From contig NC_067399.1 of NCBI RefSeq assembly GCF_016432865.1, positions 621,860,001 to 621,924,000 of the forward strand: a DNA stretch of 64,000 nucleotides, written 5' to 3'. This document shows positions 1 to 34,571 of this stretch, piece by piece; the first letter of the stretch is position 1; the number at the start of each line of letters is the position of its first letter. The notes below the pieces were generated by a model. That model saw nothing but the letters and a program-made list of their open reading frames with translations, made no database searches and was not told where the DNA came from. The position numbers were made by a program, and so were the translations under genes. The stretch is from Antechinus flavipes. Taxonomy: Eukaryota.

Positions 1-178
1 TTATTCACTAAATTATTGCATTTAAAGACCCAGGCCTCACTCCCAAACTCTACCTGGAATATTTAGAGATCATGTCACATCTTCTGGTTTTGAATTAAGC
101 TTCACAACAATTCCCTCCATTATTTTCTTAATTATGCCTTTAACACTTTTCCTTCTCAAGAACAATGGCACATGTACA

Positions 179-3764: not shown

Positions 3765-4125
3765 CATCGTGGGAAAGGGACCGAGGGCCACCTCAGCTTC
3801 TCAAGGTCCGTCATCCGCCCACCCAGGAGCATCTCTTAAGTCCCTCCATTGTCTCTCCCCGCCCCTGCCCCAACTAGCCCCTTCAGCATCCAGGTGCCAC
3901 CTGCTGCAGTTCCCAATCCGAGGGACCCTCGGGGTCCGAGATCCCCGATCAGTCCCTCAGCACCATCCCCTTCCACTGCTGAGGCCCGAATCCCTGACCC
4001 CAGCCCGAGAACCTCTATTCCCCAAAGACTCTCCCTCCTGCTGTCCCCTCTCCCCTTCCCTCCAGCCCCGTCCCCATCCCCGGCGAGGAGGGGGAGGAGC
4101 TGGGCCCCAGGAATGAATGTCAGGG
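3765..4125 (-). CDS. PARP6: Probable PARP6 exon 2: 5'UTR ending in the initiator ATG (3767-3765) directly at the donor
   Basis: Acceptor ctcactctccacccctcccccag; ends cccacgATG|gtgagc; in-frame TGA 11 codons upstream. Human PARP6 is recalled to have an ATG-only first coding exon. The next exon (DIKGQFW) was not found in 1-3760, so identity rests on synteny. Confidence 0.5.
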
Positions 4126-4405
4126 CTGGGGGAGGGGTGGAGAGTGAGCGGGGGAGAGGGAATATGTGGGGGCGCAGTTTGACGCAGGAGACATTTCGCT
4201 TTGTGGACTCGGGGACTCAAACAGCCAAGCGAAGACCCCTCCCCTCTTAGAACACTGGGGTACCAGCCAATGGAGGAGCTGGGGCGGGGCCACAACCACA
4301 CCCACCTGTAGCCAGTCACCCTGTCTTCCCTCCCCAGGTCCATCCTCTCCCCCTTTCCCTGGGTGTCTGGTGGTCGCGCCCCTTCCCCGACGAGCCCAGA
4401 CTTAC

Positions 4406-4560
4406 CTACCAGGGAGATCCTCTCAGGAGCTGGCTTGGGGTTGAGCCGGAGTGGAGGACGGGGCACTACTACCTGGAAAGCTGCTGCTGCTGCAGGGGCG
4501 AAGGCAGAGGGGAGCAGAGGGGAGAGCTCTACGTCGTGGCCGTGGGCAGGGCTAAGTGGA
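4406..4560 (-). other. PARP6: Non-coding first exon of a minus-strand gene, probably PARP6 (5' boundary approximate)
   Basis: GC/CpG-rich; strong donor TAG|GTAAGT at 4406/4405; no ATG; expected position of PARP6 relative to HEXA. Confidence 0.5.
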
Positions 4561-5084
4561 GGCGGGGAAGGGGGGGCTACACCCTAGTGGACACCCTCAG
4601 TGTCCACCTCGAATTATCCGAACACGACACCTCTTCTGAGCAAGCCTCTCACCTCCCCTGCGTCTCTTCAGCTCCTGATAGCTCTAGAGCATCCCCTTCT
4701 TACTCATGGGTATCCCGTGTCTTCCGAGTAGCCTCTCCACCCCCATTCCCTTAATTCCCAACCTTTCACCTTTCGGAGCTCTCCCTCACCCTCCAGAGAA
4801 CCTCCTCCCTCCCTAGGGTGTTCTCACCTCTTGTCTCCCAGGGCCCTTCCCGCACCCTTCAGCATCAGCACCCTTCACTCCCTCCTAGCCCCTTTCTTTT
4901 CCATACTCATTTTTAATCCCTCCCTACATCTCTTTTTCCCCTCATTTTTGAGGCCTTCTTCCCGACATGCTCCTTTCTCTGACAGCTTCAGACGCTGGCA
5001 AATGGAGTGGTGAGGGGGGAGGGGATCAGCTTTGAAGCTCTCCAACGTTCAGTCCCCACTTCTGCAGTGAGACAGAGACACAGA

Positions 5085-5170
5085 CAGAGACAGCAGGAAA
5101 GACAGAAACAGAGAGACACACACATACAGAGAGACAGAGACAGACACACAGAGATACAGAGACAGAGATT
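5085..5170. repeat. (GA/CAGA)n compound microsatellite upstream of the putative PARP6 promoter
   Basis: Direct read. Confidence 0.85.
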
Positions 5171-6759
5171 TGAGAAGAGATATCTTGTGACTTCAGATTG
5201 TCTGCCAAGAGACCCTAAAACATGGTCGGAGAGAAAAGGGTGAACTCCATGCTTTCATGGACACCATCAAAATTCAACTGTCTTTTTTTTTTTTTTTAAT
5301 TCAGTCTTGTAATTGGACTTTGGACTCAAAACCTGGCACCTGTGGCCACAGCCTTTTCAAAAGAGGCAAAGCAAAGACCTAATTTCAACCCAATATTTTA
5401 TTAAATACCTAGAGGCTACTGTACTGTGTCCAGTACCAAAGACAGAAAGATACAATCTTTGTCCTAGAGGAGTTTACAATCTGCTGGTGGGAGGGGAGGG
5501 AGAATTTGTATTCATAGATGAGCAATAGCTATGCTTATCTGTGTGTGATAAGTGATAGTGGTGGGAACAAAAAAGAAATGCAAGAAAAATGTTGCAGGAA
5601 GATTTGAGAAGGGAAAAGATAGTTTCATTGGGAAGAATCTGGGAGGAATGGAGGTCTGCAGGATCAAGGAAATACCTAGCTAATTTCTGCCAACTCCTTA
5701 AATTCTCCTTGCTAAATTCAACTTTCCTGGGATATCTCCTGTGACTAAATGAGCATACAGACAGGAAAGTGCTTCATCTTTTGTGGTTCTCCTTTCTTCT
5801 CTCAGAACTCCAGACTTCACATCATGGGAAACTTCTAGTCTTGATGTTTTGGAAAGATCTGCCAGATTTTCTCTTCTCTTCATAGTGAAATCTTAACTTT
5901 GCTGAGTCTCATTATCCTCAACTGTACCTCAATCTCAGAAAAAATATGAGATGTGTATTCTAATTTGTAAAACTAGTAATGTAAAAATGTACATATATAC
6001 AATTAAACATATTTTTTCCCCCAGTTCCTTGGGCTTTTTCAGGCTTCAGAGATAGCATGGTTATCAAAACATTCCTTTTCTAACTTGTCAGGACCAATAA
6101 GTAGAAAAATCTGCTTTCCTGGGGCCAAATTCAGAAACTTTTAAAAAGTTCAAAAGAAAAATGGTGCCGAGAAACTAAGATTAAAAAAAAAAAAAAGCAA
6201 AACAAACCGAAAAAATTAAACTACTATACTAGGAGAAATTATTGAAAGCTCAGCCCTGAATCAATTCCTTCCCCCCCCCCCCTATTTTACAAATGAGGTC
6301 ACCTACAGTGACATGCCTAAAGTCAAATCTGATTCCAAGCCAGCAAGATTGCCAATAGGCCATATGGTCATCTATCCTGATTAGGTCATTTTATTGTCAA
6401 ATGAGGTAATGAAAAAAGCACATAGGATAGGATATTCCCTTTGCTTCTCCCCTTTCTGATCCCAGAGCTATTTGACATTAGCTTTCAGTCAGTCAGGGTA
6501 ATGACCATAGAGTTGTTATATCTTTGATCCCTCCTGGATATTTCTGTGGTTGGTAAAAAGTCTTTCTTTTGCTCTGATTTGCTTCTATATTTTCCAATTT
6601 GTTTTTAGCTTTTCTGTAGGGAATCACTTCCCATCCCCAGCCAGAAGCAAATTCTCCTCTTTTCCTATTTCAAACTCTTGCTTTCTTTTGACTGCTAACT
6701 GAGTTCCTGTTTCCTGTCTGAGGGACACTTCCAACTCTCAGCTAATTTTCTCAGGATCA

Positions 6760-7390
6760 TGAAAACTCAGACTAGAAAAGATCTCCAAAGCCACACTTGA
6801 ACAAGAATGTCTTTTACAGCATGTCAACAACCTAGGTCACGTTGCTTCTCTAGAGAACGTTTGAAGAGAAGACACCCACTATCCCCAGAAGGATGTCATT
6901 CCACTTTGAGGCAGTTACAATTACATTTATTTCTACAATTTTAACTTATTCCTAGTTTTGTCTCCAAGGGCCAAGTAGAACAAGCTGTATCCTTCAAATA
7001 TTTAAACACCTTTCTTCAAGTTTTCTTTAAGTTAAGTATTCCCAGGGCTTTCCATTGTTCCTTGTATGACATGGTTTTCACTTCCTTTATCTATTGGTCA
7101 CGTCTTCTGGGATATGTTCTATGTGATTAATATCCTTCCTATCATATCATTGCCTCTCCATTTCTTACCAACTAACATAGCATGGCTACCACCCTTCTCA
7201 CTTTGCACAACTGACTTCTCAAACCAGTCTAGGATAGTAATAGCTTTTTGGATTGTTTTCTGTTATGTTGAGCTTGTTATAGTCCATTAAAACCGAATAA
7301 AGTTGTCTAACCATACCTCCCATCACCTGTATTTAGAAAATTGATTATTTGAGCTCAAGCATGGGACTTTACATTTATCCTGATTAAAAT
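6760..7390 (-). mobile_element. Ancient CR1/L3 LINE fragment
   Basis: Degenerate CR1-like 3' ORF2 text (ccttcaaatatttaa, aagttaagtattcccag); bounds approximate. Confidence 0.45.
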
Positions 7391-7399
7391 TCTTTTTAA

Positions 7400-8620
7400 A
7401 TTAGAGGGTTTTTATTAACAATTTTATTTTCTCTTCCTCCTATCTCTCATTCCATTGGGAAAAGAAAAAAGAAAAGCAAACTGCTGTAACAAAAAACAAA
7501 TTCCCTTATTGGCCATGCAAAAAAGTATATACATGTGTGTACATACATAGGATATTTATGTAAACACAGCTTTGTGTCTATACATAAATATACACATAGA
7601 TTTTTATATATATATATATAATATGCATACATATGTGTATGTATTTACAAACTGAATCTATCACCTTTTAGGTGATAGCATATTTCAATATCAGTCCTTT
7701 GGAATCATTGATGGTTATTGCATTGATTATAGTGTTATGCCACAGTTCTCAGTTTCCCTAATTATCCTGACCCAGTCATGACTCAGTTTCCCTGCTTTTT
7801 TGTCTTGCAAAACCTCCTCTTCCACTTTATCAGAATATTTGATAAGTACAGAATATCCGAATGCCTCTCCCCATCTCCAGCTATCAGAATGTCAGATACC
7901 ATCTTATCAAGATGCCTTTCCCCATCTCGGGGTGCCTCTCCCCATTATGTCATCTCCTTTTCTGGAGGCTCACCCCACCCTATCAGAATCCTGTTCCCGA
8001 TCTCAGCACCCTGACTCCGCCCCTGCCTCCCTCTATCTGAGCCATATGTATATAGGTCATTGAGAACTCTGATTGTTGGCTGGATTCTTGGAGATGACAG
8101 TCTCATTCAGCCCTGGGACCAAACCATGGATCCATCTCATCCCAGCATATCTCTCCATTTAATAAATTATTAAATACTCTCTAATCTCTATCTTGCTCAG
8201 TTTCTCCAGCATTACAATAGTTCAAACTTTCAAAATTGTCTTCGTAGTATTGTTGTTATTGCATAAATTGTTCTCTTGATTCTGCTCATTTCATTCTTCA
8301 TCATGTTGTAAAAGTCTTCAAAATTATTTATTTTTATAATTATGATGTTATATATTGGTTCTGCATATTTTATTCTGTATCAATTTATACAAGTTTTTTT
8401 GTGATTAAAGTAAATATTTCCTTTTTCCTTACATAACAAAACTATTTCATGATATTCACATACTACAATTTCCTAAGTCATTCTCCAACTGGTGGGTATC
8501 ATTTTAATTTTTATATTTTTGACATCACAAAACAAGCTGCTATAAATATTTTTGGATATATAGACTTTTTCTTCTTTCTTTGAACTTTTTTTTTTTTCAG
8601 GGCATAGGTTCAGCAGTAGT
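7400..8620 (-). mobile_element. Old L1 3' fragment interrupted by a solo LTR
   Basis: L1 3'UTR-like text continues across 7732/8217. Confidence 0.65.
7733..8216 (+). mobile_element. Solo ERV LTR, 484 bp (4-bp TSD suggests ERV1 class)
   Basis: TG...CA termini; TSD ATAG at 7729-7732 and 8217-8220; repeated U3 motifs tatcagaat and gcctctccccat; GC box, TATA-like gtatata, AATAAA at 8161. Confidence 0.85.
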
Positions 8621-11600
8621 TTAGCTCTATCCTTATTACATTTCTTCATATTCGGTTTGGCCCCTCATTATTGCTTGGTCTTCTACCCAAATTACTGATT
8701 AAATATATTTACAGCATAGGGCTAGGGACTTATCTGTGGCACTCCAAGTCAACATTGACCCAGCAAAGACTTCCTTTGGTCCAATCATTCAATCAGTTTA
8801 AATTCCACACAATTGTACTATCATATAGGCGTAGTATTCCATCTGTCCACAAAGATAGCATGAGTTGTTTTTTTTTTTTTTTTAAACAGAAATCAGAGGA
8901 CCATTTAGAGATCATTTGGACATCAGAAATCATCTGTTCATTAATAGATGAATAAAGTGAGGATCATGTTATTTTAGTTACTTACCCAAACTAACAAACA
9001 GTAAGTAGAAGGAACAAGATTCAAACTCGAGTTTTGTGTCTTTTTATCTAGCACCATATGATTGACATCTTCTGAGTCCAATAATTGACCAAGTCCAAAG
9101 GCTGAAATTCTAACCCTAATTCTATTTTTGCCATTACTCCAGATTCTCATGAAAATTTCAACAATCCTGCATTTCTAGGGGAGGAATGGAATTTTTCCTA
9201 AATCATATCATTACATTTAAAATGATAGATCCCTAGGCTGGAGTGTAGGTATTTAGCCTTCTCTTCTGTTTGAAGAGAATGATTTACTTTGTGGTCTCCT
9301 GCTGTCATCATCAGTACTTCACTAAAGATATAGAAATCATAGGGCTAGAAGGGGAGGACATCTAATCCAAACCTCTCATTTGACAGCCACCCCCGTGGGG
9401 AGAGAGGAGTGTCATTTAAGTCCAAAATTCTTATCTGACAGTTAAGAAACGAAGCCTAGACAAATGAATTTAACCTAAAATCTCTCTTAGCTAGTAAATA
9501 ACTGAGGGAGAAATTGAATCCAGATCCTTTGAATTCAGATCCAGTGGTATTTCTGTTTATAACAGCGATTCTCAATTTCTTTCCTCCCCATATAATATTT
9601 GTCACAAACATTTGGGGCAGAAGAGTTCAGAGACTTGGGCATAAGGACATAATTAAAAGCATAAATTCCATACCATTCAGGGTATGTCTAGTGGGAAACA
9701 CTCTGTGAGAGCTGCTACCTTCATCATGAAGTGCCAGGATGAGGGATTAGGTACTTTGCGGAGGTAGTGCCTTTTGAAAACAAAGGAAGATTGCTCAAAT
9801 TGTTTCCTTGCCTTTCTCTCCCCCATCCTCCATCCCAAATCTCCTCCTTCCCATTCAGGTATCATGCTCATTACTCATTTCCTCCTCCATAACATTACTC
9901 ATAATGTCGGTTGCCCTCCTCCACTCCAGTGCATTTTCCACCATCTCTATTCCAAATTCTATTCATTCTTCAAGGGCCAACTCAGATCTACCTCCCCCAT
10001 ACTGTCATCCTACACCATTCCTTCCTATAGGGATCTCTTCCTTCTAGCAGCTCTTATTGTACAAAATGCATTTAGTGATTTGCTTGTCATTTACTGAATA
10101 ATTCAATAGTCAAAAAGAGCTAGTAAAGGTGTTGTCTCCATTAAACCAGATTGTGATTCCTTCATGCCTTTAGTAAATGATCTTGGGAAAAATTTGTCAC
10201 CTGGTGGCCAGCCTTCTCCTTTTGAATTTGTTTGTCATCAGGTGACAAGTGTATGCAGTCCATTAATGGGCCTGTACTCAAAGCCTTTCCAGCCTTGTAG
10301 GACCTTCTAGAGCTTAGAGAGCCTTCAAGAGCCCAGGGTCATCTCTATTCCACGAAAAGACATCATAGGAGGACTTTTAATAGAGGTATTTACTCCATAT
10401 TTGTAGGTAGGCATAGGAAATAGGAATTAGGTCTGTGATTTCAATGATAACCAGAACTGATCTTTGAGGGAACTACCTTTATCAATTCAGGTGACCACTT
10501 ACTTTTTTTTTGCAATTTGTAGCCAAAGAAGGTTTGCCTAGAGCATTGAGAGATTAAGTGGCTCCCCGTGATACACACTCAGAGCTCACACGCTAGAGCT
10601 TCTTGATTTTCAGGCTGGCTCTACTGCTAAAAACTGCTATTTCTCTCATATTCATACTATATCTTCCCAACTAGGCTGTGTTCATCTGGAAGGTGAAGAC
10701 CTTTTTTCTGTCTCCTCCACAGGGTAGCCAATCTAGAAAGAATAAGCAAAAACACAACGACTGCTCCAGGAAGGGAATCCCCCATGGAAAGGTCTTGCTC
10801 GAAAAGCAGGGATTTTCTTTTTACCCCCAAGATCAGAGGCTGGAAGCTCTGATTTGGAAATAGAAGGTTCAGATGCTTATGCACCTCCCCTTTCCTCCTT
10901 GAGGTCCCCAGATGCCCACAGCTGGGGTTTTGCTATATATTGCTAAGGAGGGAACTGGAGGTCCATATTTTCCCATAATGAGGATTGTAGGGATCTGGGA
11001 TTTAGGAGGCAGAGGAATGGATACATTCATGCATACACTAATTCATGGGTGCTCACTGCTAAATGTTTAACATCTTTGCATTGATGGAATCTAGTCTAGG
11101 ACACAGCTCCCTTCTATTTCCAGTCAAACATGAAAAGAGTCGGGGGGGGGGGTAATACCATCTGTGAAAATTGGGTTTTTGGGGGGATAGGGATAGCAGG
11201 AGATTGTCAAACACAAGCAGAAAAGTCCTCCTTTTACTATCTAATTCTCATTTTGAGAAGTGAGAGACAGAGAGAAATCTAGGGACTAAGACAAAAAAGA
11301 AAAATGAACAGAGGTGGATAAGGGTGAAGAGGAGGAAATACAGGGAAAGACAGAGACCGACACAGACATAGGAAAAAGAGAGATAAAGACCATAAGAGAA
11401 AAGGACAATCTATTTAACCTGGCCATCCTAAAGCAAGGAAAAGGCATGAGGCCCAAAGCAAAGACTGGAAGACCACTTGGTAAGGATGTTAAAAAAGGCA
11501 CCTTTGGGTATGGGCTGGCCTGGTCTGGCACCCCTTTAATCTCAAGAATTCTATACTTGGCTCTAGGGGACAATAAATGTCCTCCTGGCTTCCTGATCTT

Positions 11601-11627
11601 TATCCTCCTCCAGCCTCAAGCACAAGC

Positions 11628-12760
11628 TTGATTAATCAATAAGCATTTATTAAATGCCTACTGATGTGACAGGCAATGTGCTAAGTGATGGGTTTCAAAT
11701 AGAATTCTGGGTCTAGAGTTAGGAAGATCAGAGTTCAAATCCAGCCTCAGATACTTATTATTTGATCCTGGGCATGTCACTTAACTCTGTCTGCCTCAGT
11801 TTCCTCAACTGCAAATAAGGAAAATCCCCCTCATAAGGTTGTTGTTAGGATAAAATGAGATAATATTTATAAAGTGCTTAGAACAATGCTTGATACGTAG
11901 TGTTTAAAAGCATTTATTCCCTTCTACCTGCCTACACTCACAGAGCTTACATTCTAATGGAAGAGACAAAAATACACATATAAGTAAATAGTGAATAAAT
12001 AGAAACATATAAGATAGGGAGGAAGACATCTGCAGTTGGAGGAATCAAAAAAAAGCTTAACTACTGAATATGGTGCTAGAACAGCTTTTTAGAGAAAGAG
12101 ACGAATTTAATGAGGTAAAGGCAAGGAGAGACTGAATTCCAGAAATGAAGGGGTCACAAGGACAAGGAGACTGGAGATCGTATGTGTTAAATAAGGGACA
12201 GAAAAGGTCAGTATATCTAGATCAAAGTATGGAGAGAGGAATAATGGAGAAGAAGATCAGAAAGTTAGTTTGAAGTCTGGTTGTAAAGTCAACTTTACAG
12301 CTTTAAAAGTCAAACAAAGAAGTTTATATATAACCCTAGAGACAATAAGGAGTTACAAGAATTGAGCTGGGGAGGGATATGGTCAGATCTAGCTTGCATT
12401 CGGTGTATGAAGGAAGCATTGGAATGATGAGAGGCTGGAGGTAGGAAACTAAGCAGCGATTTGCTGCCATTATTCAGGAGAGAGATGATAAGGGCCTGAG
12501 CCTGAGTCAAGGCTATGTGAGCAGAGAGAGTAAGTTGGATCAGAGAGATATTGAAGATAGAAATGGCAAGATGTGGGAACTGATTGGATATTTGCAGTGA
12601 AGGAGAGTATTAAGATAAAACGAGGAGACTTTAAGAATGGTGATGTCTTTGAAATAGGGAAATTTGGAAGAGTTTTAGACAAGTTGAATTTATGCTGTCT
12701 CTGGGACATCTAGACTGAAATCTCCAAGGACATCTGGTGCTTCAGGACTGAAGTTCAGAG
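11628..12760. mobile_element. L2 fragments with an embedded MIR
   Basis: L2 3' end (aagcatttattaaatgcctact) and MIR core (gagttcaaatccagcctcag); bounds approximate. Confidence 0.6.
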
Positions 12761-12947
12761 AGGATATAGGGAAGGAAGGTTTGGAATAATTTGTGGGGCA
12801 GAGTGAGAGAGAATCTCCCATTAGGGAGAAAAGGGATAAAATAGGATAAACTCTACTGTTTGGCTCTAAAGCCCTTCACAACATGGTCCCAACCTCTGTT
12901 TTTTGGATCATTCTATATTTTCCTTTTCTCACATACCTTTTCTCACT

Positions 12948-13763
12948 TTCTTTCTTTCTTTCTTTTTTTTTTTGAATGTACAATATTCTCTCTCTATTTT
13001 TTAAAAAAATAACTTTTTATTGATAGAACCCATGCCAGGGTAATTTTTTACAGCATTATCCCTTGCACTCACTTCTGTTCCGATTTTTCCCCTCCCTCCC
13101 TCCACCCCCTCTCCCAGATGGCAAGCAGTCCTTTACATGTTGAATAGGTTACAGTATATCCTAGATACAATATATGCATGCAGAACCGAACAGTTCTCTT
13201 GTTGCACAGGGAGAATTGGATTCAGAAGGTAGAAATAACCCGGGAAAAAAACAAAAATGCAAGCAGTTTATATTCATTTCCCAGTGTTCTTTCTTTGGGT
13301 GTAGCTGCTTCTGTCCATCCTTGATCAAATGAAACTGAATTAGCTCTCTTTATCGAAGAGATCCACTTCCATCAGAATACATCTTCAAACAGTATCATTG
13401 TTGAGGTCCTGGTTGATCTCCTGGTTCTGCTCATTTCACGTAGCATCAGTTCATGTAAGTCTCTCCAAGCCTCTCTGTATTCATCCTGCTGGTCATTCCT
13501 TACAGAACAATAATATTCCCATAACATTCATATACCACAATTTACGCAATCATTCTCCAATTGATGGGCATCCATTCATTTTCCAGCTTCTAGCCACTAC
13601 AAACAGGGCTGCCACAAACATTTTGGCACATACAGGTCCCTTTCCCTTCTTTAGTATCTCTTTGGGGGATAAGCTCAGTGGAAGCACTGCTGGATCAAAG
13701 GGTATACACAGTTTGATAACTTTTTGAGCTTAGTTCCAAATTGCTGTTCAGAATGGCTGGATG
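12948..13763 (-). mobile_element. Young 5'-truncated L1 (dasyurid-type 3' end) with poly(A) and TSD TCTCACT
   Basis: TSD at 12941-12947 and 13764-13770; poly-T tract on +; low-divergence L1 3'UTR and ORF2 end. Confidence 0.88.
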
Positions 13764-16700
13764 TCTCACTAACTTTCTTAATTGTTCTTTACAGATGGCA
13801 CTCTATCTATTTCACTCTATTTCTTATTTTTTCTCTGGCCATTCCTCAGACCTGAAATGTACTCTTTCCTTACTTCTTCCTCACAGAGTCCCTCTGTAGC
13901 TCACTCCCCAAGTACTACTTTTTAAAGGAAGCCCTTTTTGATCCTCTCACTGTTGGTGTCTTCTCTCACAAACTGCCTGCAGTTGTTTTGTATGTATTCT
14001 GCCTTACTTACTTCTAGTCCACCATGTCTAGTAGAAATATGTGGTCCTTGGAATTATCTTGTTATGTGTGATCCTTATGCGAAACTTTGAAGGAAATCCT
14101 AAACCTAATTGTAAAAGTTCAGTTCCTCTAAGAACCTCCTTCAGGGAGGAACCCTGAAAATCCTTTCCTATTTTAGAGAAGATGATAATTGAAAGGCTCA
14201 ATGGTTTCATTCCTTCTTATTTCAATGAAAATAGAGTACATTTTCTCTTTCATATATATATATATATATATACTTCCTATATATTAAGATGAACACTGCT
14301 GGGATTCTATCTCCAGTATTTGATCTTGATTTCTGTCAAAGTGAATATTAGAGGTCTTCAAATGAAGGGCATATAGAGAATATCCTCCAGAAGATTCTAG
14401 TTTAAGGGCATGTTGGTTTCATGACCTTCAAGATCTCATCCAAATGGGAGATTCCATGATTCAGATCCTAAATATGTCAAAAGAACACACGTACTCTTCA
14501 TGATACATAACAAACATTATCAGCCCATTTTAGGAACTTCAATCCACCTCCATAACTTAAGACAATCTTTTTTTTTAATACACTGATCTTCCTCTCCTAC
14601 TAGCTTCTACTAGTATATACTTCAATAACTCCAATGAACTACTAAGGGTATTAGTTTGCTGAAAATGTTTACCTTCTAGACATAGTGATAGGATTAGGGA
14701 ATACGGAAAAGGAATAAGTTTTTATTAAACACCTACCTATATGCTTGATATTGTGCTTTACAAATATCTCATTTTGATCAGGGGAAGAAAACTCTTTGGA
14801 GACAGTGGTTAGTGATGAGAGGTGAAGAAAAAGAGCAAGTGGGTGATTTATGGAATCCAAAAAGAAAATAAAGGTAGCACAGTAACTTTTGTCTGGGCCT
14901 GGGGTCCCAAAACTGTATTGGTCAGAAAACTATGGGCCCCTTCCTCAAATTCCTCCATGCGACCACAGAGCTTTCTGTTTCTGAAGGTGAAAGACCTGAG
15001 TAGTAATCCATCAGTTAATCAGCTCTGATTCTTTCATATTTGCTTGTTATGAGCTTATAGGTTTCACTGTAGCTAAATTTAGGGTGTAGTCTGGAGATAG
15101 GGAAAGGGAGATGCCATTGGATTAATGAAGGCCTTTTCTGGTAGTTCCTTTCTCCCACTACCACTTTTTTTTTTTTTTTTTTAAAGAAATCCATCACTTT
15201 TTGAAGGATAAGACCCCTACATTACAGTACAGCTTTCTAAATACTAGTCCTTGGCTTGGAGGCTATCATACTATCATAAGTTTAGAAATAGGAGAGACCT
15301 TAGGAATCATCCAGTCCAACTTTAATTAAACTCTAGCTCAAGGTATTTAGCCCACTAATCTTTTGTTCCCCAAATCTGCTTGGCTCTCTGAGCTCTGAGA
15401 TCTGCTGTACCCATTGGCTTATTGCAGGTTCTCTTTTTTCTGCCATTTCCTATTTCCTTTCTTGCTTAGAGTTCCACACATATACAATTTTTTTGAGGGG
15501 GAAAGGATGTTATTCACAAGGGGACATATGTGTACATACACCCACCTATCCACTGTATATATATTTGGATGGGGCTCTAAAAAACGGAGAAAGTGTAATG
15601 TACACAAGGAAATAAATTGGTGTTTAGTAGACAGTATCCAGATTTACGTAACTGTTCCTAGATGAAATATTTGGGCCTAGCCCTGCATTGTCTCCATGAT
15701 TTACTAAGCTCAGAATCCCTTCTCTGGGACTTGATGTACCCCTTCTGGCCTACTTGAGAATGACACTTTGCTCTGATTCCTGGAGCCTCTAAACATGTCC
15801 CTGTGGATGGTGCCATTATCCTCCCAGGTTCCTAATCTCCATCATATTCTATTCTGGTCTTCTAGACTTATAGCTGGAGGGACCTTAGGGGCTATTTAGT
15901 CCAACCTCCTTTACAGATGAGGAACCGGAGATCGGAGTGGATAATGACTTGCCTAACATCATGTTGGAGGTAAATGGTAGAGCTAGAATTTAAATTTAGA
16001 TTCTTGGTGGCCATCTTGAATGCTCTTTCCAAAATGATCATCTACTATTGACTCTATCTAGAGAGTCTCCCATCCCTCCCCTCCTCTCCATTCCCACTTG
16101 TCTAGGCCCTCAGAAGGAGCCCATGTGTTGTCCTGGCACTCTCCAAGTCTCCTCCAGCTCTTGCCTTCAGTCCTGTCTACATATTTTTAATCCCTGGCTG
16201 TTATTGGCACTTCTACTTTCCCACAGAAAGATTGTCTTTTATCGTATCTCTTTCTGTCTCAGCATAGCCTTGCATTTTGTTTCTTTTCTGAATAGGCAAA
16301 TTAGTTCAGTTCACAAAAGATCATTATAGAGTTATCATTTTCAAGGACCCACAGAACAAAATGTGGAAGGGAGAAGACCCCTGGGAAAATCTATTTTGGA
16401 TCACATTCTGCCAGATTCTGGGGTGGGAATGATCTTGCAATTTCATTTTTACTTTTAAGACATTTTTACAAATACATTTTCTTCCCAACTTTTATTGACA
16501 TCTAAGTATTCATTTATATGAATATATATGAACAAGAACACAAAAATATAAATAATCCTAAATCCCAACAATAACCTTTTCCCCAAAAAGAACCCCTCAA
16601 TTAAACAAAATAATATGAAAAAGTGATTTCAAGAGAATGTAAATATTGCTTCATTTTTTCTAGTTGGGTTGTTTACTTTTCATTCTGTTTTTAATGCTAA

Positions 16701-16971
16701 TTAGAATGGAGGCCTAGAACTGTTCTCTAAACTAAGTGGTTTGTTGTTGCTATTCAGTTGTTCCAATTTCAGCCATGTCCTAGAGTTTTCTTAGCAGATA
16801 TTATTAGAGGGATTTGCCATTTCCTTCTCCAGCCCATTTACAGAGAAGAAAACTGAGACAAGTAGGATTATGTAACTTGCTAAGGGCTTGGAGATTGGAT
16901 TTGAACTCTGGGAGAGGAGTAGTTTAATTTATTAAGCACCTACTATGTGCCAGGATTTGTGCTAAGTATCT

Positions 16972-17229
16972 CCTTTTTAAAAAGTTTATTTATTTTTAAT
17001 ACATACTGTTTTACGAATTATGTTGGGGGAGAAAAATCAGAGCAAACAGGAAAAACCATGGGAGAGATTAAAAAAAAAAACAAACAGAAAAAAGAAGTGA
17101 ATATAGTATGTGTTGATTTATATTCAGTCTCCTTAGCTCTTTCTCAGTCAGACGACATTTTTTGTCCAAAGTCTATTGGGATTCTTTTGAATCACTGAAC
17201 TGAGAACCATGACTTTCATAGTTGATCAT
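16972..17229 (-). mobile_element. L1 3' fragment inserted into an L2
   Basis: 16-bp TSD tttgtgc(t/c)aagtatct at 16956-16971 and 17230-17245. Confidence 0.7.
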
Positions 17230-18354
17230 TTTGTGCCAAGTATCTTACGGGATACAAAGAAAGACCAAAAGAGTTCCTGCTCTCAAGGAGATCACAGTCT
17301 AATGGGGAAGACTAATAGCTATGTATAAACAAGCAATAGTCAAGAGAAATTAAAGAAAACCATAGTGGAAAGGCCCTTGAATTATAATAGGTCTGTGTTT
17401 AATCAGCTGGGAGTTAGTCCTGTCAAGGGAGAAAAAGAAGAGGGGTGGGGTGGGGGTGGAGAATTCCAGCCACCAACTTCACAGCTCAATCTCCAGTCCT
17501 CCCATTCCTATGTATCTTTCTGAGATAGTTTCAGTAATCAGATAAATTCCTCAAGGCCACAACAATGGCAATGGTGGAGCCTTTAAAACGATGGATAATT
17601 AGAGCTGCTGATAATGGATTTCTGCTTGGGCCATTTGTATGTCTTTAGTTTGCTTTTCAGGAGCATCTTAGTAAACATGTCAACTGTGATCTCAGTGACT
17701 TCCACCTCCTTATCTCTCCCCAAATTAAGTGCACTATACTGGTTTTGTCACTCAGGTATGTGGAGGATTTTCTCCCAGGATGGCAGGAAGACATCAAAAA
17801 GGTTGTGAAGCTAGGAAATTGTTGACCATTAATTCCTGGTATTCATGGAGCATTCCTTGTCTCTTTGTGTGGGTGTGGGTGTGTGGGTGTTTGGGAAGGG
17901 TGAGGATATTAATATCAGTATAATGCATTAAAATGAAAAAAGAAGTAATTTTACACAGATTTATAGACAGAACTAGGAGAGACCTTAGAGATCACCTCCA
18001 CCCCTTTTATACAGAGGAAACAAACCTAGGGAGGTTTCGTAGAGTAAGCTAAATGGTCCTTGTCCTTGGCAAATCACAACCCGTTTGCCTCAGTTTCTTT
18101 ACCTGTAAAGTAGGAATAATAATAATACCTATTTTCTAGCATCATAGTGAAGAACAAATGAGATAATTTTTGTAAAGTGCTTAGCTCAGTGTCCGGCACA
18201 TAGTAGATACTTAAATGCTTGCTAGCTTTTTTCCTTCCAAGGTGACACAACTGGAAAGTACGGCAGGACTAGAATTTTAATCTAGGACCTTTGTTTCTAA
18301 ATTCAGATCAAAGATACTTTTACTGACCCAGCACGTTTAGCTGGTAATAGCTGA

Positions 18355-18612
18355 AGGGAAGGGTGTATTGGTAAATGTTTAACAACTAGTTCTCTAAAAA
18401 AAAAACAATTAAATGTCACTTTTATGCTTAATATGCATTACTAGTATTTTTCTCCATCACTTCTTTCATTTTAGACAATCAACAAAGCAATCAATAAAGC
18501 TCTGATTTGTAGTGATTGCCAGTTTCTGAGATGTAAATGCTTATACTGAAAAAAATCTTCAATTAGGTGGCTCTCTCAGGCTTGTCCAAGCTGGCTCCAG
18601 CACAGCCTTGGT
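18355..18612. mobile_element. Old non-autonomous hAT (Tip100-like) DNA transposon
   Basis: Ends resemble ggtgtgctggtaaatgtttaacaac...ggctccagcacacc termini; family call from memory. Confidence 0.45.
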
Positions 18613-19299
18613 TTTAGTTCCTTCCTCTTTTATCTGATCAAGAGTAATTTATGCTCTAATAAAGAACTTTTTAGAGACTCCTTCCTCCCCCTACCTACCC
18701 CCCAAATCCTCCAACCCTCCCAAACTCCCCCTCTCAAAATAAGGAATTAGTGGAGGGAATTCAGGTAGTGTAAAGGCAGGTAGGGCAATTTTGGTTGTTT
18801 CTTATTCTACTTCCTTGTAGAGCTACTTCTGATGGGCTGGAGCATTTACACGAGAGCAAAGACACTAAGGGGCCTTATCTTATCTTCACTTAAGTCTTAG
18901 TAAGGGGCAGAGCCAGGATTAGAGCCTAAGTCTGAGCTCAGGGATCCTCTCTCCGAACCGCCTAGCATTCTCACTGCCTCCATCCCCCCTCTATCCCTCT
19001 CCCCCACTCCTTGTAGGTGTCTTAGTTTCTTTATTAACATTTATTAAAAGTGTCTCCTCTAGATAAGGGACCCGAGCATTTCTGTATGCTCGGCTGCTTG
19101 TATGCATCGGTGCTTTGATCAAACTCTTTCCAGACTGTTTATTTTTCATTTGCCATAGCGTACAATTTGCCAGGAATGATGTGAGAGCCAGATAGGAATC
19201 AGTGAGGGTTTTTGAAATTAAAAAAAAAATATTGTAGTCATTAACACAGAATGTACAATACCCTTTGGGTACATGAAAAGGAAATTGGATTTAGAAGTG

Positions 19300-20090
19300 A
19301 TGGCTCCCGGCATCCGGCATTTTCTCTGCTTTCCTCACTACTGAGGATACTCAGGATCCTCTCACGTGGAAGCTACTCGATACTGAGCGCTTCAGGAGGC
19401 CCCCTGCCCTTGCCCACCCAGCCGCAGCCTCTCTCCTCCTGGACCTTCCCTCTCTAGATCTCTAACCCCTGGCCCTGAAGGGGAGCGGCTCAGAGACTGC
19501 GGGGAGATCCTTGTGCTCATGGGGCTTCCTCCCTTCCCAGAGTAGACCCGATGGTTACATGCGCAGGGGTGGGGATGGGATAGCCGAGTATAAGGAGCGG
19601 GGGAGTAGGAGAGCCCCGGATCTTTGGGGTTAGGGTGGGACCCCGAGGCTTGTGCATTCTCCTTGGCTTTTAAGCAAAGGTCGGAAGCTTGCTTGTCAGG
19701 GTCTTGCCATTTGCACTTCTGAAATCTGGCGACTCCCAAATATCCGGCACCCATCCCGTCATTTTCACGTTCCCTCTAAGGCAAGAAAGAACAGTCTAAG
19801 CTGCCTGTCCCCTCGCCCCCATAATGGGGCTGTGGGATGTCTGGAGCAGCACTGCCCCCTCCTGGCTGCCCTTCAGAAGGCAGCTAAATATAACGGCACT
19901 CAGATTAAATGGGCAGATCTATGGCACTGATCCCGATGCCCGCCCCCGACATACGGGCATCTCTGGGAATCAAGAGCAATCCCTGTGGAGATAGTCCCTC
20001 TCCCCTGCCTGCAGTCAGCCCCGTTGGGCTGGGGATTGGAAGGGGGCTTTTCTGCCGTCAGGCCCAAGGGGTGCGATCCATTTCTAGCTT
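19300..20090. promoter_or_regulatory. Orphan CpG-rich, promoter-like island (E-box CACGTG 19363-19368, TATA-like 19885-19893, GC box 19939-19946)
   Basis: Roughly 30 CpGs in about 0.8 kb against a CpG-poor background; no recognisable coding exon. Confidence 0.55.
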
Positions 20091-21039
20091 TCCTGCCCCT
20101 TTGTGCTCAGGCCTGCCAGTGAAGCAGCATTAACTAAGCACCACCTGTGCCAGGCACACTGCTAAGCCCTGCCATCATAAAGGAAAAAGCAGCCTCTGCC
20201 GTGAGTCTAATGCGGGAGACAGCAGGTAAATGACTGCACCAAGGAGAGAACCTCGGGGAGAAGGCACTAGCACCAAGGGATGGCAGGGACTGGCAGGTGA
20301 GAAGCCACGCCCTGCAGGAAGCCAGGAGGCAGAGAGAGAATTCCAATGAGGGGGCCAGTCTATGAACATCCCCGGCCGGGAGACGGTCTCTACAAACTTG
20401 GCCTGGAAAGTGCCTTTCCCCAGATCTCAGAGGAGCAAGGCAAGGATTCTGACCCAAGCATTCCCTAATCTCCTTCCATGGGAAGTCCTTCAAATACAAG
20501 GCAGTTAGTCCCATCCCTCCAAGCAAAGGTTGGAGACAAGTGAGTGTGTGGAAGAGGGACAGGGGAGCCTGGGAAAGCTCTTAAAGCCTTCTTAGTCTTG
20601 GGAGTTACCTGTCCATCTGGAGTATTCTACCTGGCTTGAACAGCCAAACTGACCCTGCAGTTGGGGTCTCTCCCCAGAAATCATAGCCTTTAAGGTGTCT
20701 GGAGAGTTGATGGCATCTTGGGCAGCCAGAGGGGCAGCACCAACTACCACTTTGCAAAGGGGAACAGGGAGGACAGAATGGTATCCCTGGCCAGATGCTG
20801 CCCCCCAGTCACCAAGGGAGGAATCACTTTCTTTGCCCTCCCTACCATTTAGGCACTCCACAGCCAGCAGCTAAAGGTGGTTCATCTTATTGAACAAGGG
20901 TATCCCGTTTCATCTATGCTGGTCTCTCTCCAGAGGCCAAACACTACATCTTTCCTCTTCTTCCCAAGCCCAGGCCTATTAGATGTCTTCACTAAAAGCC
21001 TTATACTGGGCATCCTAGGACAGAGGAGAGTTTAATATT

Positions 21040-21082
21040 CTATCACCCAATATATAGGGACACCCTATATATTGGGTGATAG
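21040..21082. repeat. Perfect inverted repeat, 20-bp arms, 3-nt loop
   Basis: ctatcacccaatatataggg-aca-ccctatatattgggtgatag. Confidence 0.97.
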
Positions 21083-21804
21083 GGTGCCCCAGTGCCTTGC
21101 ACTGGAAAGTCAAGAAAAGTAAGTCTCTGCCTTCAAGATTAGACTTTATACGAGAGTCTTCACATTTTAACTTGGCAGAGACAAACTCCAAAACTGGAAT
21201 CTCATCAAATGTTCAGACCTTAAGTCTCCACCTCTCTATCAAAGATAACTTGCATTTTCAAAAGGCTTAATCTTTAATGTAAAACTGGAGGCTTCTGATA
21301 GGCAGGTGGCCAAGATTTCTTTTGGTTGGAGTGTTATCTGTTTTACTGGGTTGTCTGGCAAGCCCTAGGCTTGTGGGCTGTGGGCACGTCTGCTACAGCA
21401 TGCATCAGGGACACACTTGAGGTCCTGTGGTTCTTCAGGAGCCTGGGACCCTTTAACCACTGTCCCTTCCTCTCCCTAGAGATTACCCAGAGTTCTAGAA
21501 AAGAGAATGTCAAGAAAGGAGCTGGATCCAAGACCTATTAAAGATCCTGGGAAGAAGTTCCTTTGCCTCAGGGGTTAGCCTTTGGAGAGTAATAGGAAAT
21601 CAGTACAAAGACTAGATAGGGGATTGCTAAAGTTCAGGAGATTTATTCTGAGCATCAAACTGCTCAAATGCAAGTACTGTTAAATGCTTTCCTAGGATTG
21701 GAGGAGAAATAGTTGAACTGCTGCTGTCTTGAATGGAGTTACAATGATTGATTGGTGAGTCAGTCACAGTTGTGGGCTCACAAAAGCAGTTTGTCACAAA
21801 ATTC

Positions 21805-21810
21805 TTTATT
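21805..21810 (-). terminator. Probable HEXA polyadenylation signal AATAAA (second candidate at 21642-21647)
   Basis: tttatt on + strand, about 150 nt past the stop codon. Confidence 0.65.
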
Positions 21811-21960
21811 GGACTTGAATCACAGCACAATCTCCAGCCCCCTCCCCACCAGGGGGTCCCCAGGGATGCACATGGAGGTTTGCTCACCACTTGGGTTAAG
21901 CTAGAGAGCCAGCCTGACATGACCCAAGTTTCCTGAGTGATCAACACATGCAGGATGAGT

Positions 21961-22042
21961 TCAAGGATGATTTTGCTCCATTCTATGGAAATATTCATGC
22001 TCACAATAGCCTACAAAGAGAGGCTGGGCTTGGATACCTCGT
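21961..22042 (-). CDS. HEXA: HEXA exon 14 coding part ([26 protein letters not shown])
   Basis: ttacag acceptor; TGA at 21963-21961. Confidence 0.95.
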
Positions 22043-25000
22043 CTGTAAGAAGACAAAAAGGAGAAAGCAGGTCATGGGAAGGAGGGGACAGAGCTAGGGT
22101 TGGGAAGGAACTGATAGAAAATCACTTATTATGTGCCTATGGGCAAAAGCCTGGGGAACCTGAAACAGTTCCTGTCCTCAAAAAACTCACATTCTACCGT
22201 TGGATACAACATGTACGCAAAGAAAGAACAAGGTAATTTTAGGACTGACTGAGCCCTATCTAGGCCCAGAGGTCAGAGCACTTAGGCTGAGGATGGAAAC
22301 AAGCCAAAGATCCTCAGAGCTCCAGCTAGGGAGGCCCAGGAAATGGGAAGGCATGGGCTCACAACCAGGGCTTTGGGATGGCGAGATCAGGGATTACGCC
22401 ATGGACAATCTCAGGCCAGCCTGAGTCATTCCCTACATCCCTGGGCACTGCAAGTGTCAGCTTTGAGCAGGAGCGTACAAAACTCAAGCCACAGATTCTA
22501 GTGGCTTGGTGATCTAAAATATCTAGTCTAATCGTCTTGTTTCATTTGGTAGGAAACAGGCTCAGGGACGAGTTAAGTGCTCATAATCACAGCAGTTGGA
22601 TTGGACCCTCCAATCTTACTCCTAACCTAGTGAGCTTTCTACAATGACCATATGTCTGGCGAGGTGTGCAATCAATGCGGGAGAGAACAAATTATTGTGG
22701 TCTAGCTCTTGGCTTTAAGGAACCTCTTTCCTTCTGCAAAAATTCTTAGAAACAGCCAAACTTAACAATGTTTGATGAGAAGGACTGCGTAGACTGCAAA
22801 AAGGCTCTGAGGAATTTGAGTACTATGTCTAATCCATATCATTAGACTGAAGCCAAGGTTAAAAAGGCAAATTTACAAATATCATCTTCCCAATCCCACA
22901 ATAATTTGCCCTGGTGAAAGCTGGAAATACCAATCTAGGGCACAATCCCTGCCCCTCCTACCTGAGCAGCTCACACCGGAAGTGGACCAGTCGGTCATAC
23001 GCCAAATCCAAGTCCCTCGTGGACTGGCTGCTCCAAAGCCTCTCTGCCACAGCTCCTCCCCTGGGCCTGGATGGGGACACAGAGCCAGCCCCTGGTCAGA
23101 TTTCTTGTTTGGGCTGGGAGGATGTGACTGGAACAGGAAAGGGGTGAGTGGATGTGCCCCAGAGAGTGCTGGGGATGAGAATCTTATGGCTGAACCACTC
23201 GCGTACTGTGACCTAGACATGGTTATTTCATCTAACAAATCCTGCCCTCTCTCAAAGAAGAAGACAACAATTGTGAAAAGGGTCTTGGAGGAAATGGCAT
23301 ACTGGGGTTTTAGAGGATCATGGAGAGCGTCATCTGAGGCCATCTCAATATATGGATGAGGAAACTGAGATAAAAGGATTTAAGTGAGTTGCCAAGATCA
23401 GACAGCCAGAGGTGGTATTTGAACCCAGATCTTCTGTTTTCAGAACCCACGGCCTTTCTCCCACATTAAAATGTTTCCCTCTTGGGGTCACAAAGCAGAG
23501 GTGGAACATGGCTCTGGGGTCAGCAGCAGGTAGCTGTAGCTGAGTGCAGGCTAAGTGGGCACGAGACATGACGCGCCAGACTTTGGGAGTGGCAGGGAAA
23601 AGCAAAGGGTAGCGAGTGCCCAGGGCCTGGCCCTCGGCAAATGACTTATGCCCTTGGCACCCATGGAAAAAATGAGGTACACTCCCTATCTTAACTACCA
23701 GCCCTGGATGAGACTAGCACAAGAAAGATTATACAAACTGAAGGAATCACGAGGCTAACACTTGGTGTGGCTATTGGGCCAGAAGATGAGGGGAGGAGGA
23801 AAAAAATATCAGGAGGGCATCAGAAATAACTCTGGGTCAGCGTAGGCCAGTTGGAAGCCACGGCTTCTGCTGGGCTTCATCTCTCTCCTGCCTTGTTTGC
23901 CAGCTGCCCCTTACGACTCCATTATTTCCTCCCTTCCTCTAACCAGTTCCACTCCCCCCCTGCTGCTTACCAGAGTCTGGGGGTCAGATTTGTCTCGTCC
24001 ACGTATTCGCCCCACATGCAGGCTTCGCCCCCAATCACCAGAGACTTCTGCTCAGGGCTGCCTGCGGGAACATAAGCTCGGTCATGAAGGCAATGCCAGG
24101 GACTCAGGACAAGTCCAGCAGGAGGACATGTTATTTAATAGTTCCAAACATCAGGGCATCATGAAAAGATGTATTTGTGGGCAGCTCCAAGAAGGACTGA
24201 AACTCCTTTCAGGACCAAACCCTCTGAACTCCCATTATTCAGATTTCCTCTTGTGGGTCCCAATTCCAAGGAGTGCCACAAGAGAAGGAGGGGCCTATGT
24301 CCTCCCTTCCACATCCTCGAACCTTCAAAGTCCAGGGGATCCACCATGTAGATTTCCTGCCAGTCCTGCCCGTAGGAGATACGGTTCAGATACCAGGGCG
24401 CAGACAACAAGGCACGGAACCCTGCCTTGGTGACATTCTGCATCTCCAAGGTGTATGGGAAAGGGTTCGTTTCTTTCCAGACATGCACCACAGTGTCTGG
24501 GTTCAGCTGGTGACAAGAAACGAAATAAGACGGATTAGGAGTGAAGGTTACCTGCTGCTAGGGGAAAGGGCCTCAGCACTTTCACCAGAACTAATGGCCT
24601 CACATGGGCTAAACACTTCAAAAGAACAGAGACCTATTCAATGTCCTTGTTGTCCCTACCTCTACCCCTCTTTGTAGACCCCCAAGAGGGTCGTGTTTGA
24701 GCACCTCCAAAGGCCCGAGTTCCAGGGTGCCCTGGGCCTCTGCCAGCTGACAGAGAGGGTAAGGCATCTCTCGTTTCCAAATCTCAGACCCAGGGTGAAG
24801 CACTCCTTCTCATCCTGCCAGTGCTGAGGAGCCCCTGTCTACTGGCCTGGGGCTGGAGGAGAGAGGCAGGAATATAGAAGGCACTTGACTCTGAACCACA
24901 TTTTTGTCCCTCTTCCTGTTTAGAACCTCACTTTAAAACTTGGGCAGGGGTGTGTGGGGAAGGAAGGCAGGTGGTAGTGGTGGTGGTGGGGTTCCAAGAA

Positions 25001-27565: not shown

Positions 27566-27636
<71 letters not shown>

Positions 27637-33600: not shown

Positions 33601-34537
33601 CAGGAAAGATCTGTAACCCAAGGATGTGCTTACAATTCTCCACAGAATTCATTTCTGGAAACTGGTCACATCCAGGGACATTCACAAAGACTTCCAAAGA
33701 ATTCTTCATCGTTTGCTTCAGTCCTGCAAGAAGAGAAGAAATTCGGGACTCTCACCTCCACCAATATAGCATATATAATAGGAAGGACCTTTAGGGCAAT
33801 CTTTTTTTTGCTGAGGCAATTGGGGTTAAGTGACTTGCCAAGAGTCACACGGGAGGTCATCTAATTTAATACCCTCATTTTTTATAGATGAGGAAATATG
33901 AGGTTCAGAGAGATTAAGAGACCTCTCCAGGCACATATTGTTCAGTAAGGAACTCATGTTCCTCCAATAAAAGGGTAGCACCAAGTCTTGGACCATGCTT
34001 ATTGTTCATTGATCAGATGTATGTACTTATTCTTTTTATTCTGTTAGCTATGTAGTCTTTACATATACCCAGAGAATCATTAAGTATTTTGTGGACTTTA
34101 AAGCACTTAAACAAATGTCAATTATGATGATGTTAATTCACATGTGGGTCTGGATGGAAACTTCTCTAGTAGAGGTCTTATCTGTTTTGTTGTGACTAGC
34201 TCAGGCCAGTAGGCCTCTAGTTTGTGAATGGGATTCCCCAGGCAAGAAACTCTTAAGTGTTGATGCTACCCCATAGTGGTGATGCCGTATGTGATGTTTG
34301 TTTCTTATATTGTCTTTATTGTATTGCATTTGTTGACTGTATATTACTTTGGTGTTATAAATTTTCTCTCCCCCCTGTCTTATTTGAATCAAAATTCTAA
34401 GCAGTAATAAACTTTTATCACCCCTATCCTTTTAACTCTATGCCTGTCGAATGCAAATTCTGAACTTAGATTAATCTTATAAATCCTCCCCCCCCCCCAA
34501 ATAGATTTTAAAGTTTTGCTTCTGATACTATTGTTAG

Positions 34538-34571
<34 letters not shown>

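What the first reader, a model, noticed from the sequence alone, without database searches (positions are those of the whole stretch)
4600..21800. CELF6 appears to be missing between PARP6 and HEXA
Established (recalled): in human the RNA-binding gene CELF6 lies between PARP6 and HEXA on the same strand. Seen: this 17-kb interval is mostly L1/L2/LTR/SINE debris. Neither the ORF track nor my reading of the minus strand shows RRM exons (KLFVGQIP, GCAFLTY, KLFVGML, NLFIYHLP, KRLKVQLKR). Inference: lineage-specific loss or relocation of CELF6, a neural splicing and mRNA-decay regulator.
Basis: partly seen in the sequence, partly recalled or inferred. Interest (0 to 1): 0.7.

Follow-up and report, generated by a model that had tools for sequence, protein, structure and literature searches.

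The report
No CELF6 downstream of antechinus HEXA
The 17 kb next to the HEXA gene of this marsupial holds no trace of the brain RNA-binding gene CELF6, but the neighbouring "PARP6" was never shown to be there, so a shuffled gene order is a likelier explanation than a lost gene.

Summary
The window is yellow-footed antechinus chromosome CM028218.1, 621,860,001-621,924,000 (100% match).

No CELF6 remnant exists in 4.6-21.8 kb or anywhere in the window. This rests on Pfam scans of 358 stop-free pieces, tBLASTn with six real CELF6 proteins (best E 0.8 against 1e-39 on quail), and a CELF6 profile (best E 2.4, like a reversed control).

The interval has no N. It is colinear at about 90% identity with Tasmanian devil DNA downstream of HEXA, with no constrained block.

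The PARP6 anchor is unsupported. Devil PARP6 finds no exon in the window. The 3.5-5.0 kb CpG-rich block shows no similarity to the rabbit PARP6 promoter. Devil PARP6 and HEXA lie about 2,170 protein accessions apart, whereas hummingbird HEXA and CELF6 are at most 83 apart.

In birds CELF6 starts 2.7-5 kb after HEXA. My recalled human spacing is about 20 kb, so 21.6 CELF6-free kb is not anomalous on its own.

Odds:
- Linkage broken, CELF6 elsewhere: 0.5
- CELF6 just left of the window: 0.2
- True loss: 0.2

"Mostly repeats" was not confirmed.

The parts
21961..40830 (-). HEXA coding range, ATG to stop, 14 exons. It forms the right flank of the interval.
   Evidence: tBLASTn of Antechinus flavipes HEXA (P0564, XP_051837918.1): the exon 1, 13 and 14 hits are 100% identical, at 40543-40830, 22961-23065 and 21964-22044. 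The annotated gene range of L007 maps to 40830-21961.
21642..21960 (-). HEXA 3' UTR with two AATAAA signals, at 21805-21810 and 21642-21647.
   Evidence: Pattern scan on the minus strand.
4600..21800 (.). The interval in question. It is CELF6-free DNA with no recognisable protein domain on either strand, and it evolves at the local neutral rate.
   Evidence: Pfam on 358 pieces. tBLASTn with CELF6. CELF6 HMM. Devil-antechinus identity is 0.87-0.94 per kb, with no 100-base window standing out of the noise. No blastn or tblastx match to bird CELF6 loci or to the rabbit PARP6 upstream region.
3500..5000 (.). Weak CpG-rich block: GC 0.56-0.64, CpG observed/expected 0.35-0.43. It looks promoter-like on the minus strand (inverted CCAAT, a CAG|GTAGTA donor-like site near 4470), but its owner is unknown.
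   Evidence: Composition and sequence reading. No Pfam domain. No similarity to the rabbit PARP6 promoter beyond shuffled controls.
19000..20500 (.). Second weak CpG-rich block, 1.1-2.6 kb beyond the HEXA poly(A) signals. It shows no coding signal and has the lowest devil identity of the interval (0.87).
   Evidence: A low-scoring match to quail CELF6 exon 4 found with uncorrected statistics vanished once composition correction and real CELF6 proteins were used.
12938..13767 (.). About 830 bases present in antechinus but absent from the devil orthologous stretch. Part of it (13008-13157) has a 95% identical inverted copy inside a HEXA intron (35278-35429), so it is a young dispersed repeat.
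11733..11815 (.). MIR-like ancient repeat fragment. Similar fragments lie at 16926-16967 and 18155-18215.
   Evidence: Multiple dispersed blastn matches inside the echidna HEXA locus and within the window.

Best explanation
Window 4.6-21.8 kb is ordinary, neutrally drifting intergenic DNA downstream of an intact HEXA. It carries no CELF6 exon, intact or decayed. The 'hole between PARP6 and HEXA' depends on an unproven anchor, because nothing in the window is PARP6. Most likely the ancestral amniote linkage HEXA -> CELF6 (-PARP6) was broken by chromosomal rearrangement in the lineage leading to dasyurid marsupials, so that CELF6, if kept, now lies elsewhere with or near PARP6. HEXA-TMEM202 would then be a small island between breakpoints. 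Shown here: absence of CELF6 and PARP6 sequence in the window; colinearity with devil; the bird arrangement. Inferred: the rearrangement and the present whereabouts of CELF6.
For: No CELF6 trace and no PARP6 exon anywhere in the 64 kb. In quail and shearwater an RRM_1 gene named CELF6 starts 2.7 kb and 5.1 kb after HEXA on the same strand. So the ancestral neighbour is missing from that position in antechinus, and no gene is called within 10 kb downstream of HEXA in antechinus, devil, possum or wallaby. In one devil annotation, on the same 690-Mb chromosome, HEXA is KAM9062211 and the PARP6 isoforms are KAM9064386-391, about 2,170 protein records apart. In a hummingbird annotation that uses the same isoform naming, adjacent CELF6 (KAM9375173-194 for T11-T32) and HEXA (KAM9375246) differ by at most 83. 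An earlier follow-up reports another break of human gene order 30 kb away in this window, where TMEM202 abuts LRIT1. A first-reader note, not followed up, reports mixed human chr15-like and chr10-like genes 17.8 Mb further on. The interval shows no constraint and no relic, as expected if the gene was never deleted in place.
Against: The accession-order argument is indirect. In an elephant shrew, HEXA and a 'PARP6-like' protein are 424 accessions apart, so the yardstick is coarse, and I could not fetch the devil PARP6 locus. No marsupial CELF6 protein was seen, but the searches could not have listed one, since the top 120 of 1,793 hits were all sauropsids. In rabbit the PARP6 CpG island lies about 5 kb upstream of the ATG exon. 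So the 3.5-5.0 kb block could still be a PARP6 promoter whose first coding exon lies left of the window.
Confidence: 0.5

Rival explanations
1. CELF6 is intact and still HEXA's downstream neighbour, but its first exon lies just beyond the left edge of the window, more than 21.6 kb from HEXA. On this reading nothing is missing. The 3.5-5.0 kb block is then an upstream CpG island, an alternative non-coding first exon, or an unrelated element.
For: The window covers only 21.6 kb downstream of the HEXA stop. From memory, the human HEXA-CELF6 spacing is about 20 kb and the mouse spacing about 13 kb. Echidna also shows no gene and no CELF6 exon within 10 kb of HEXA. Runs guessed to be RNA hold about 15% of the sampled words of window 1-6000, so something there may be transcribed.
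Against: The CpG-rich block at 3.5-5.0 kb holds no CELF6 exon 1 coding sequence, although in birds exon 1 carries the ATG and half of RRM1. No CELF6-type conserved element was found in the left 5 kb. If the devil's PARP6 is far from HEXA, at least one break lies on this side.
Confidence: 0.2
2. The 3.5-5.0 kb block is the PARP6 promoter and non-coding first exon, PARP6 and HEXA are direct neighbours, and the whole CELF6 gene was deleted cleanly in a marsupial ancestor.
For: The block is promoter-like on the strand expected for a same-strand PARP6. In rabbit the PARP6 CpG island sits about 5 kb upstream of the ATG exon, so missing coding exons in window 1-3.8 kb are compatible. No relic is visible.
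Against: No PARP6 sequence of any kind in the window. No similarity between the block and the rabbit PARP6 5' region beyond chance. Devil PARP6 and HEXA are about 2,170 accessions apart, with PARP6 carrying the higher numbers.
Confidence: 0.12
3. CELF6 was lost from the genome in dasyurids or in all Australidelphia, in connection with the rearrangement, for example disrupted at a breakpoint. It exists neither here nor elsewhere.
For: It is absent from the ancestral position. A neighbouring gene, RGR, is reported lost in marsupials with a relic in this same window. No paper in the library mentions CELF6 in a marsupial.
Against: No relic exon is present, although a breakpoint-disrupted gene usually leaves some. 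The absence of literature or of listed database hits is not evidence (one search listed only the best 120 hits, all sauropsids). The opossum ortholog tables I could read also lacked PARP6 and HEXA, so they say nothing. CELF6 is conserved from birds and turtles to eutherians.
Confidence: 0.1

Closest known systems
Bird HEXA-CELF6-PARP6 locus (Japanese quail L003, Cory's shearwater L004)
   Same: HEXA has the same exon structure, and ARIH1 or TMEM202-side genes lie upstream. The gene order provides the ancestral expectation that CELF6 follows HEXA on the same strand.
   Different: In birds CELF6 begins 2.7-5.1 kb after HEXA, and PARP6 follows tail-to-tail on the opposite strand. In antechinus there is no CELF6 and no PARP6 within 21.6 kb.
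Human 15q23 order PKM-PARP6-CELF6-HEXA-TMEM202-ARIH1 (recalled, not tested here). Rabbit PARP6 -> PKM on one strand was tested.
   Same: HEXA-TMEM202 adjacency. A CELF6-free stretch of about 20 kb after HEXA is, from memory, also seen in human.
   Different: PARP6 appears to be far from HEXA in the devil.
Unitary gene loss with a relic, for example the RGR first-exon relic reported at 53-63 kb of this same window (earlier finding s1-196621)
   Same: A gene expected from eutherian gene order is not found at its place in a marsupial.
   Different: There a decayed exon was reported. Here no remnant of any CELF6 exon is detectable, so in-place decay is not supported.

Membership tests
CELF6 gene or pseudogene at this locus (CELF family: RRM1-RRM2, divergent linker, RRM3; PMC13326565) | Exons encoding RRM domains with RNP1/RNP2 motifs | tested here: not met
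   Pfam RRM_1 is absent from 358 pieces of the interval and 91 pieces of 1-4600. CELF6 HMM best E is 2.4, outside the interval.
CELF6 gene or pseudogene at this locus (CELF family: RRM1-RRM2, divergent linker, RRM3; PMC13326565) | Exons of the divergent linker (the Q/A-rich region between RRM2 and RRM3) | tested here: not met
   tBLASTn with six full-length CELF6 proteins gives no hit better than E 0.8 in 64 kb. The control on the quail locus gives 2e-39.
CELF6 gene or pseudogene at this locus (CELF family: RRM1-RRM2, divergent linker, RRM3; PMC13326565) | Position immediately downstream of HEXA on the same strand | tested here: not met
   True in quail and shearwater. Nothing within 21.6 kb in antechinus. 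No gene is called within 10 kb in devil, possum or wallaby.
In-place unitary gene loss | Both flanking orthologues identified on either side of the gap | tested here: not met
   HEXA is identified. PARP6 is not: no exon, no promoter similarity.
In-place unitary gene loss | Decayed remnants of the lost gene between the flanks | tested here: not met
   The 19.5-19.8 kb candidate did not survive corrected statistics.
In-place unitary gene loss | No intact copy elsewhere in the genome or transcriptome | not testable with these tools
   No whole-assembly search is available. 
Evolutionary breakpoint / relocation | Former neighbours lie far apart in the same or a sister genome | tested here: inconclusive
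   Devil HEXA KAM9062211 and PARP6 KAM9064386-391 are on the same chromosome. Calibration: hummingbird at most 83 apart, elephant shrew 424 apart. Direct coordinates of devil PARP6 were not obtainable.
Evolutionary breakpoint / relocation | The gene now flanking the interval belongs to a different ancestral block | not testable with these tools
   The owner of the 3.5-5.0 kb block lies outside the window. No fetched locus reaches left of window 11.46 kb.

The most novel reading that the evidence does not exclude
CELF6, a vertebrate-wide neuronal splicing and mRNA-decay regulator, has been lost outright in dasyurid (or all Australidelphian) marsupials, removed without a relic at a rearrangement next to HEXA.
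Probability: 0.2. Interest if true: 0.6.

Novelty: new member of a known kind. Interest (0 to 1): 0.3.

Why it matters
If CELF6 were truly gone from marsupials, they would be a natural knockout of a gene tied in mice to serotonergic and monoaminergic neuron function and to vocal communication. That would be worth a study. What the evidence supports so far is more modest. HEXA-TMEM202 sits in a much-rearranged part of a marsupial chromosome, and its ancestral neighbour CELF6 is not within 21.6 kb. The practical lesson is that an 'expected gene missing' call needs both flanks identified. Here one flank was assumed, not seen.

Tried and rejected
(1) RNA evidence. The look-up of sequencing runs on window 1-6000 gave runs guessed to be RNA holding 0.15 of the words. 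Only local scripts in the sandbox read the whole window file.

(2) A possible decayed CELF6 exon 4 at 19560-19851 (minus strand). It appeared with uncorrected tBLASTn statistics using quail stop-free pieces that include intron read-through. I rejected it because it is absent with composition correction and real proteins and with the profile, and because the region is the least conserved against devil.

(3) Fetching the marsupial PARP6 locus. Devil isoform P0499 and wombat isoform P0523 are not the longest products and are not on record. Three cluster listings did not show the longest devil or antechinus isoform.

(4) Gracilinanus HEXA and chicken CELF6 X2 look-ups failed. Possum and wallaby loci came without DNA.

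(5) Looking for a marsupial CELF6. The CELF6 search listed only sauropsids, and the bird and turtle clusters hold no mammal.

(6) Literature. There is no paper with CELF6 plus marsupial, opossum or Monodelphis beyond a methylation-clock paper that is irrelevant here. The opossum ortholog supplements were cut or lacked PARP6 and HEXA too, so they are uninformative.

(7) Rfam found nothing in 2500-24000.

(8) I did not build or search a joined (spliced) HEXA, CELF6 or PARP6 model. Exons were searched piece by piece by reference, and full-length proteins came from the databases.

(9) Some cluster members were human proteins. I did not use them, and I fetched no human contig.
Full report
WHAT THE WINDOW IS. 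The window has no N. A look-up of the Antechinus flavipes HEXA protein (P0564, XP_051837918.1) returned locus L007 from GCA_016432865.2, CM028218.1:621,871,961-621,910,830. L007 matches window 50830 -> 11961 at 100% over 38,870 bases. So the window is CM028218.1:621,860,001-621,924,000 in record orientation.

RIGHT FLANK. HEXA lies on the minus strand. tBLASTn with the species' own protein places all 14 exons between 40830 (ATG) and 21961 (stop), and the hits for exons 1, 13 and 14 are 100% identical. Two AATAAA signals follow, at 21805-21810 and 21642-21647.

IS THERE ANY CELF6 IN THE INTERVAL? I ran four independent tests.

- Motif scan. There was one plus-strand eight-residue match, which runs into a stop, at 19132-19155.
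- Pfam. All 358 stop-free pieces of 30 aa or more from both strands were scanned (alignments A1-A4 served only as containers). No RRM_1 appeared, only single noise hits with best E 4e-4.
- tBLASTn with real CELF6 proteins. I obtained these by reference as follows. A HEXA exon (window:27725-27907:-) led to vertebrate HEXA proteins. The quail HEXA locus shows a 487-aa RRM_1 gene 2.7 kb downstream. A natural 284-aa stop-free frame of that locus, used with the region option, returned named CELF6 proteins. tBLASTn of six of them (chicken, softshell turtle, skink, owl, shearwater, cuckoo) against the whole window gave best E 0.8. The same search gave 2e-39 on the quail control.
- Profile HMM. A profile built from 60 CELF6 proteins was run with filters off against every six-frame piece of 8 aa or more. 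The best E was 2.4, at 63.8 kb. The reversed-sequence control gave 13.

A weak match to quail exon 4 at 19.56-19.85 kb was an artefact of uncorrected statistics and GC-rich intron read-through, and it did not recur. I conclude that no CELF6 exon, intact or recognisably decayed, is in the interval or anywhere in the 64 kb.

IS THE INTERVAL REAL AND WHAT IS IT? Two Tasmanian devil assemblies carry HEXA with 10 kb of downstream DNA (L001, L002). That DNA is colinear with window 21.5 -> 11.46 kb at 85-92% identity. Per-kb identity is flat at 0.87-0.94, and no 100-base window rises out of the noise. The DNA therefore behaves as unconstrained sequence. About 830 bases (12938-13767) are antechinus-specific and contain a young repeat that is also present in a HEXA intron.

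- No retroelement protein domain was found (the Pfam calls above).
- Only 5% of the interval has a second copy in the window.
- A few MIR-like fragments match echidna.
- Rfam found nothing.

Two weak CpG-rich blocks exist, at 3.5-5.0 kb and 19.0-20.5 kb.

LEFT FLANK: IS IT PARP6? A natural 393-aa stop-free frame in the shearwater PARP6 region gave me named PARP6 proteins, including a devil isoform (P0499). tBLASTn of devil, tenrec and pigeon PARP6 against the window gave nothing better than E 2.3, while the shearwater control reached 3e-60. The bird 3' exon pieces also found nothing. Pfam on 91 pieces of 1-4600 was empty.

The 3.5-5.0 kb block looks promoter-like on the minus strand. It shows no similarity to the rabbit PARP6 5' region, either by blastn or by local alignment against shuffled controls (observed 16-18, null maximum 20).

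A PARP6 promoter at 4.4 kb whose first coding exon lies left of the window is therefore not excluded by the missing exons.

INDIRECT EVIDENCE THAT PARP6 IS NOT NEXT TO HEXA IN DASYURIDS. In the devil annotation of GCA_048593225.1, both genes are on the 690-Mb chromosome. HEXA is KAM9062211.1, and the PARP6 isoforms T6, T10 and the next one are KAM9064386, -390 and -391. Such accessions run in the order of the record.

- In a hummingbird annotation that uses the same isoform naming, CELF6 T11-T32 are KAM9375173-194 and the adjacent HEXA is KAM9375246.
- In an elephant shrew, HEXA and a 'PARP6-like' protein differ by 424, so the yardstick is coarse.
- A gap of about 2,170 records is much more than CELF6 and PARP6 isoforms alone could fill.

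I could not get the devil PARP6 coordinates, because only the longest product is indexed. I therefore rate this evidence as suggestive only.

Two earlier notes fit it. A follow-up on this same window reports that TMEM202 abuts LRIT1 (human chr10) instead of ARIH1. A first-reader note, not followed up, places a human-chr15-like gene beside a chr10-like gene 17.8 Mb further on.

ANCESTRAL STATE AND SPACING. In quail the order is ARIH1(-), HEXA(+), CELF6(+), with CELF6 2.7 kb after HEXA. In shearwater it is HEXA(+), CELF6(+) 5.1 kb later, then PARP6(-) tail-to-tail. In rabbit, PARP6(+) is followed by PKM(+), with no gene and no CELF6 exon in the 10 kb upstream. No gene is called in the 10 kb downstream of HEXA in antechinus, devil, possum, wallaby or echidna. 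tBLASTn finds no CELF6 exon in the devil and echidna loci. From memory, not tested here, the human HEXA-CELF6 spacing is about 20 kb. A CELF6-free stretch of 21.6 kb is therefore not anomalous by itself.

VERDICT. The core observation, no CELF6 exons in the interval, is solid. The interpretation needs the left flank, and that flank is not established. My odds:
- 0.5: the HEXA-CELF6/PARP6 linkage was broken by rearrangement, and CELF6, if kept, lies elsewhere.
- 0.2: CELF6 lies just left of the window.
- 0.1: loss linked to the rearrangement.

No mechanism is at stake beyond chromosome rearrangement or deletion. The interval itself has no detectable function.

LIMITS.
- I built and searched no joined spliced model. 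Exons were searched piece by piece by reference.
I worked beside those places in all later search-tool calls.
- Human-named proteins that appeared in cluster listings were not used.
- Whole-genome absence of CELF6 cannot be tested with the tools available here.

Noticed in passing
L004:29847-36379 versus L006:10001-44355: PARP6 is tail-to-tail with CELF6 in Cory's shearwater (opposite strand). In rabbit, PARP6 and PKM run in tandem, and from memory human PARP6 is on the same strand as CELF6. So the CELF6-PARP6 junction has been rearranged at least once among amniotes.
   Followed up: partly
window 12938-13767 and 35278-35429: An antechinus-specific insertion relative to the devil. It contains a 150-base element that is 95% identical, in inverted orientation, to a copy inside a HEXA intron. 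It is probably a recently active SINE-like repeat.
   Followed up: partly
window 19000-20500: A weak CpG-rich block lies 1-2.6 kb beyond the HEXA poly(A) signals. It has no coding signal and the lowest identity to devil in the interval. It may be an orphan CpG island or simply GC-rich neutral DNA.
   Followed up: partly
window 5065-5169 and about 27.5-27.7 kb: An imperfect (GAGACA)n array flanks the 3.5-5.0 kb block, and a long (CA)n run lies in the HEXA intron next to exon 8.
   Followed up: no
protein clusters around P0496/P0497: The 90%-identity PARP6 clusters also contain PKM proteins and fusion models of about 1,180 aa (for example from goat). PARP6-PKM read-through gene models have evidently glued the two families together in the database, which is a trap for name-based look-ups.
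   Followed up: no
It was left out of all later search-tool calls.
   Followed up: no
B10K bird entries: Many bird proteins that sit at the CELF6 locus type and match CELF6 are named 'CELF3 protein, partial' in their source records. This looks like a systematic misnaming.
   Followed up: no
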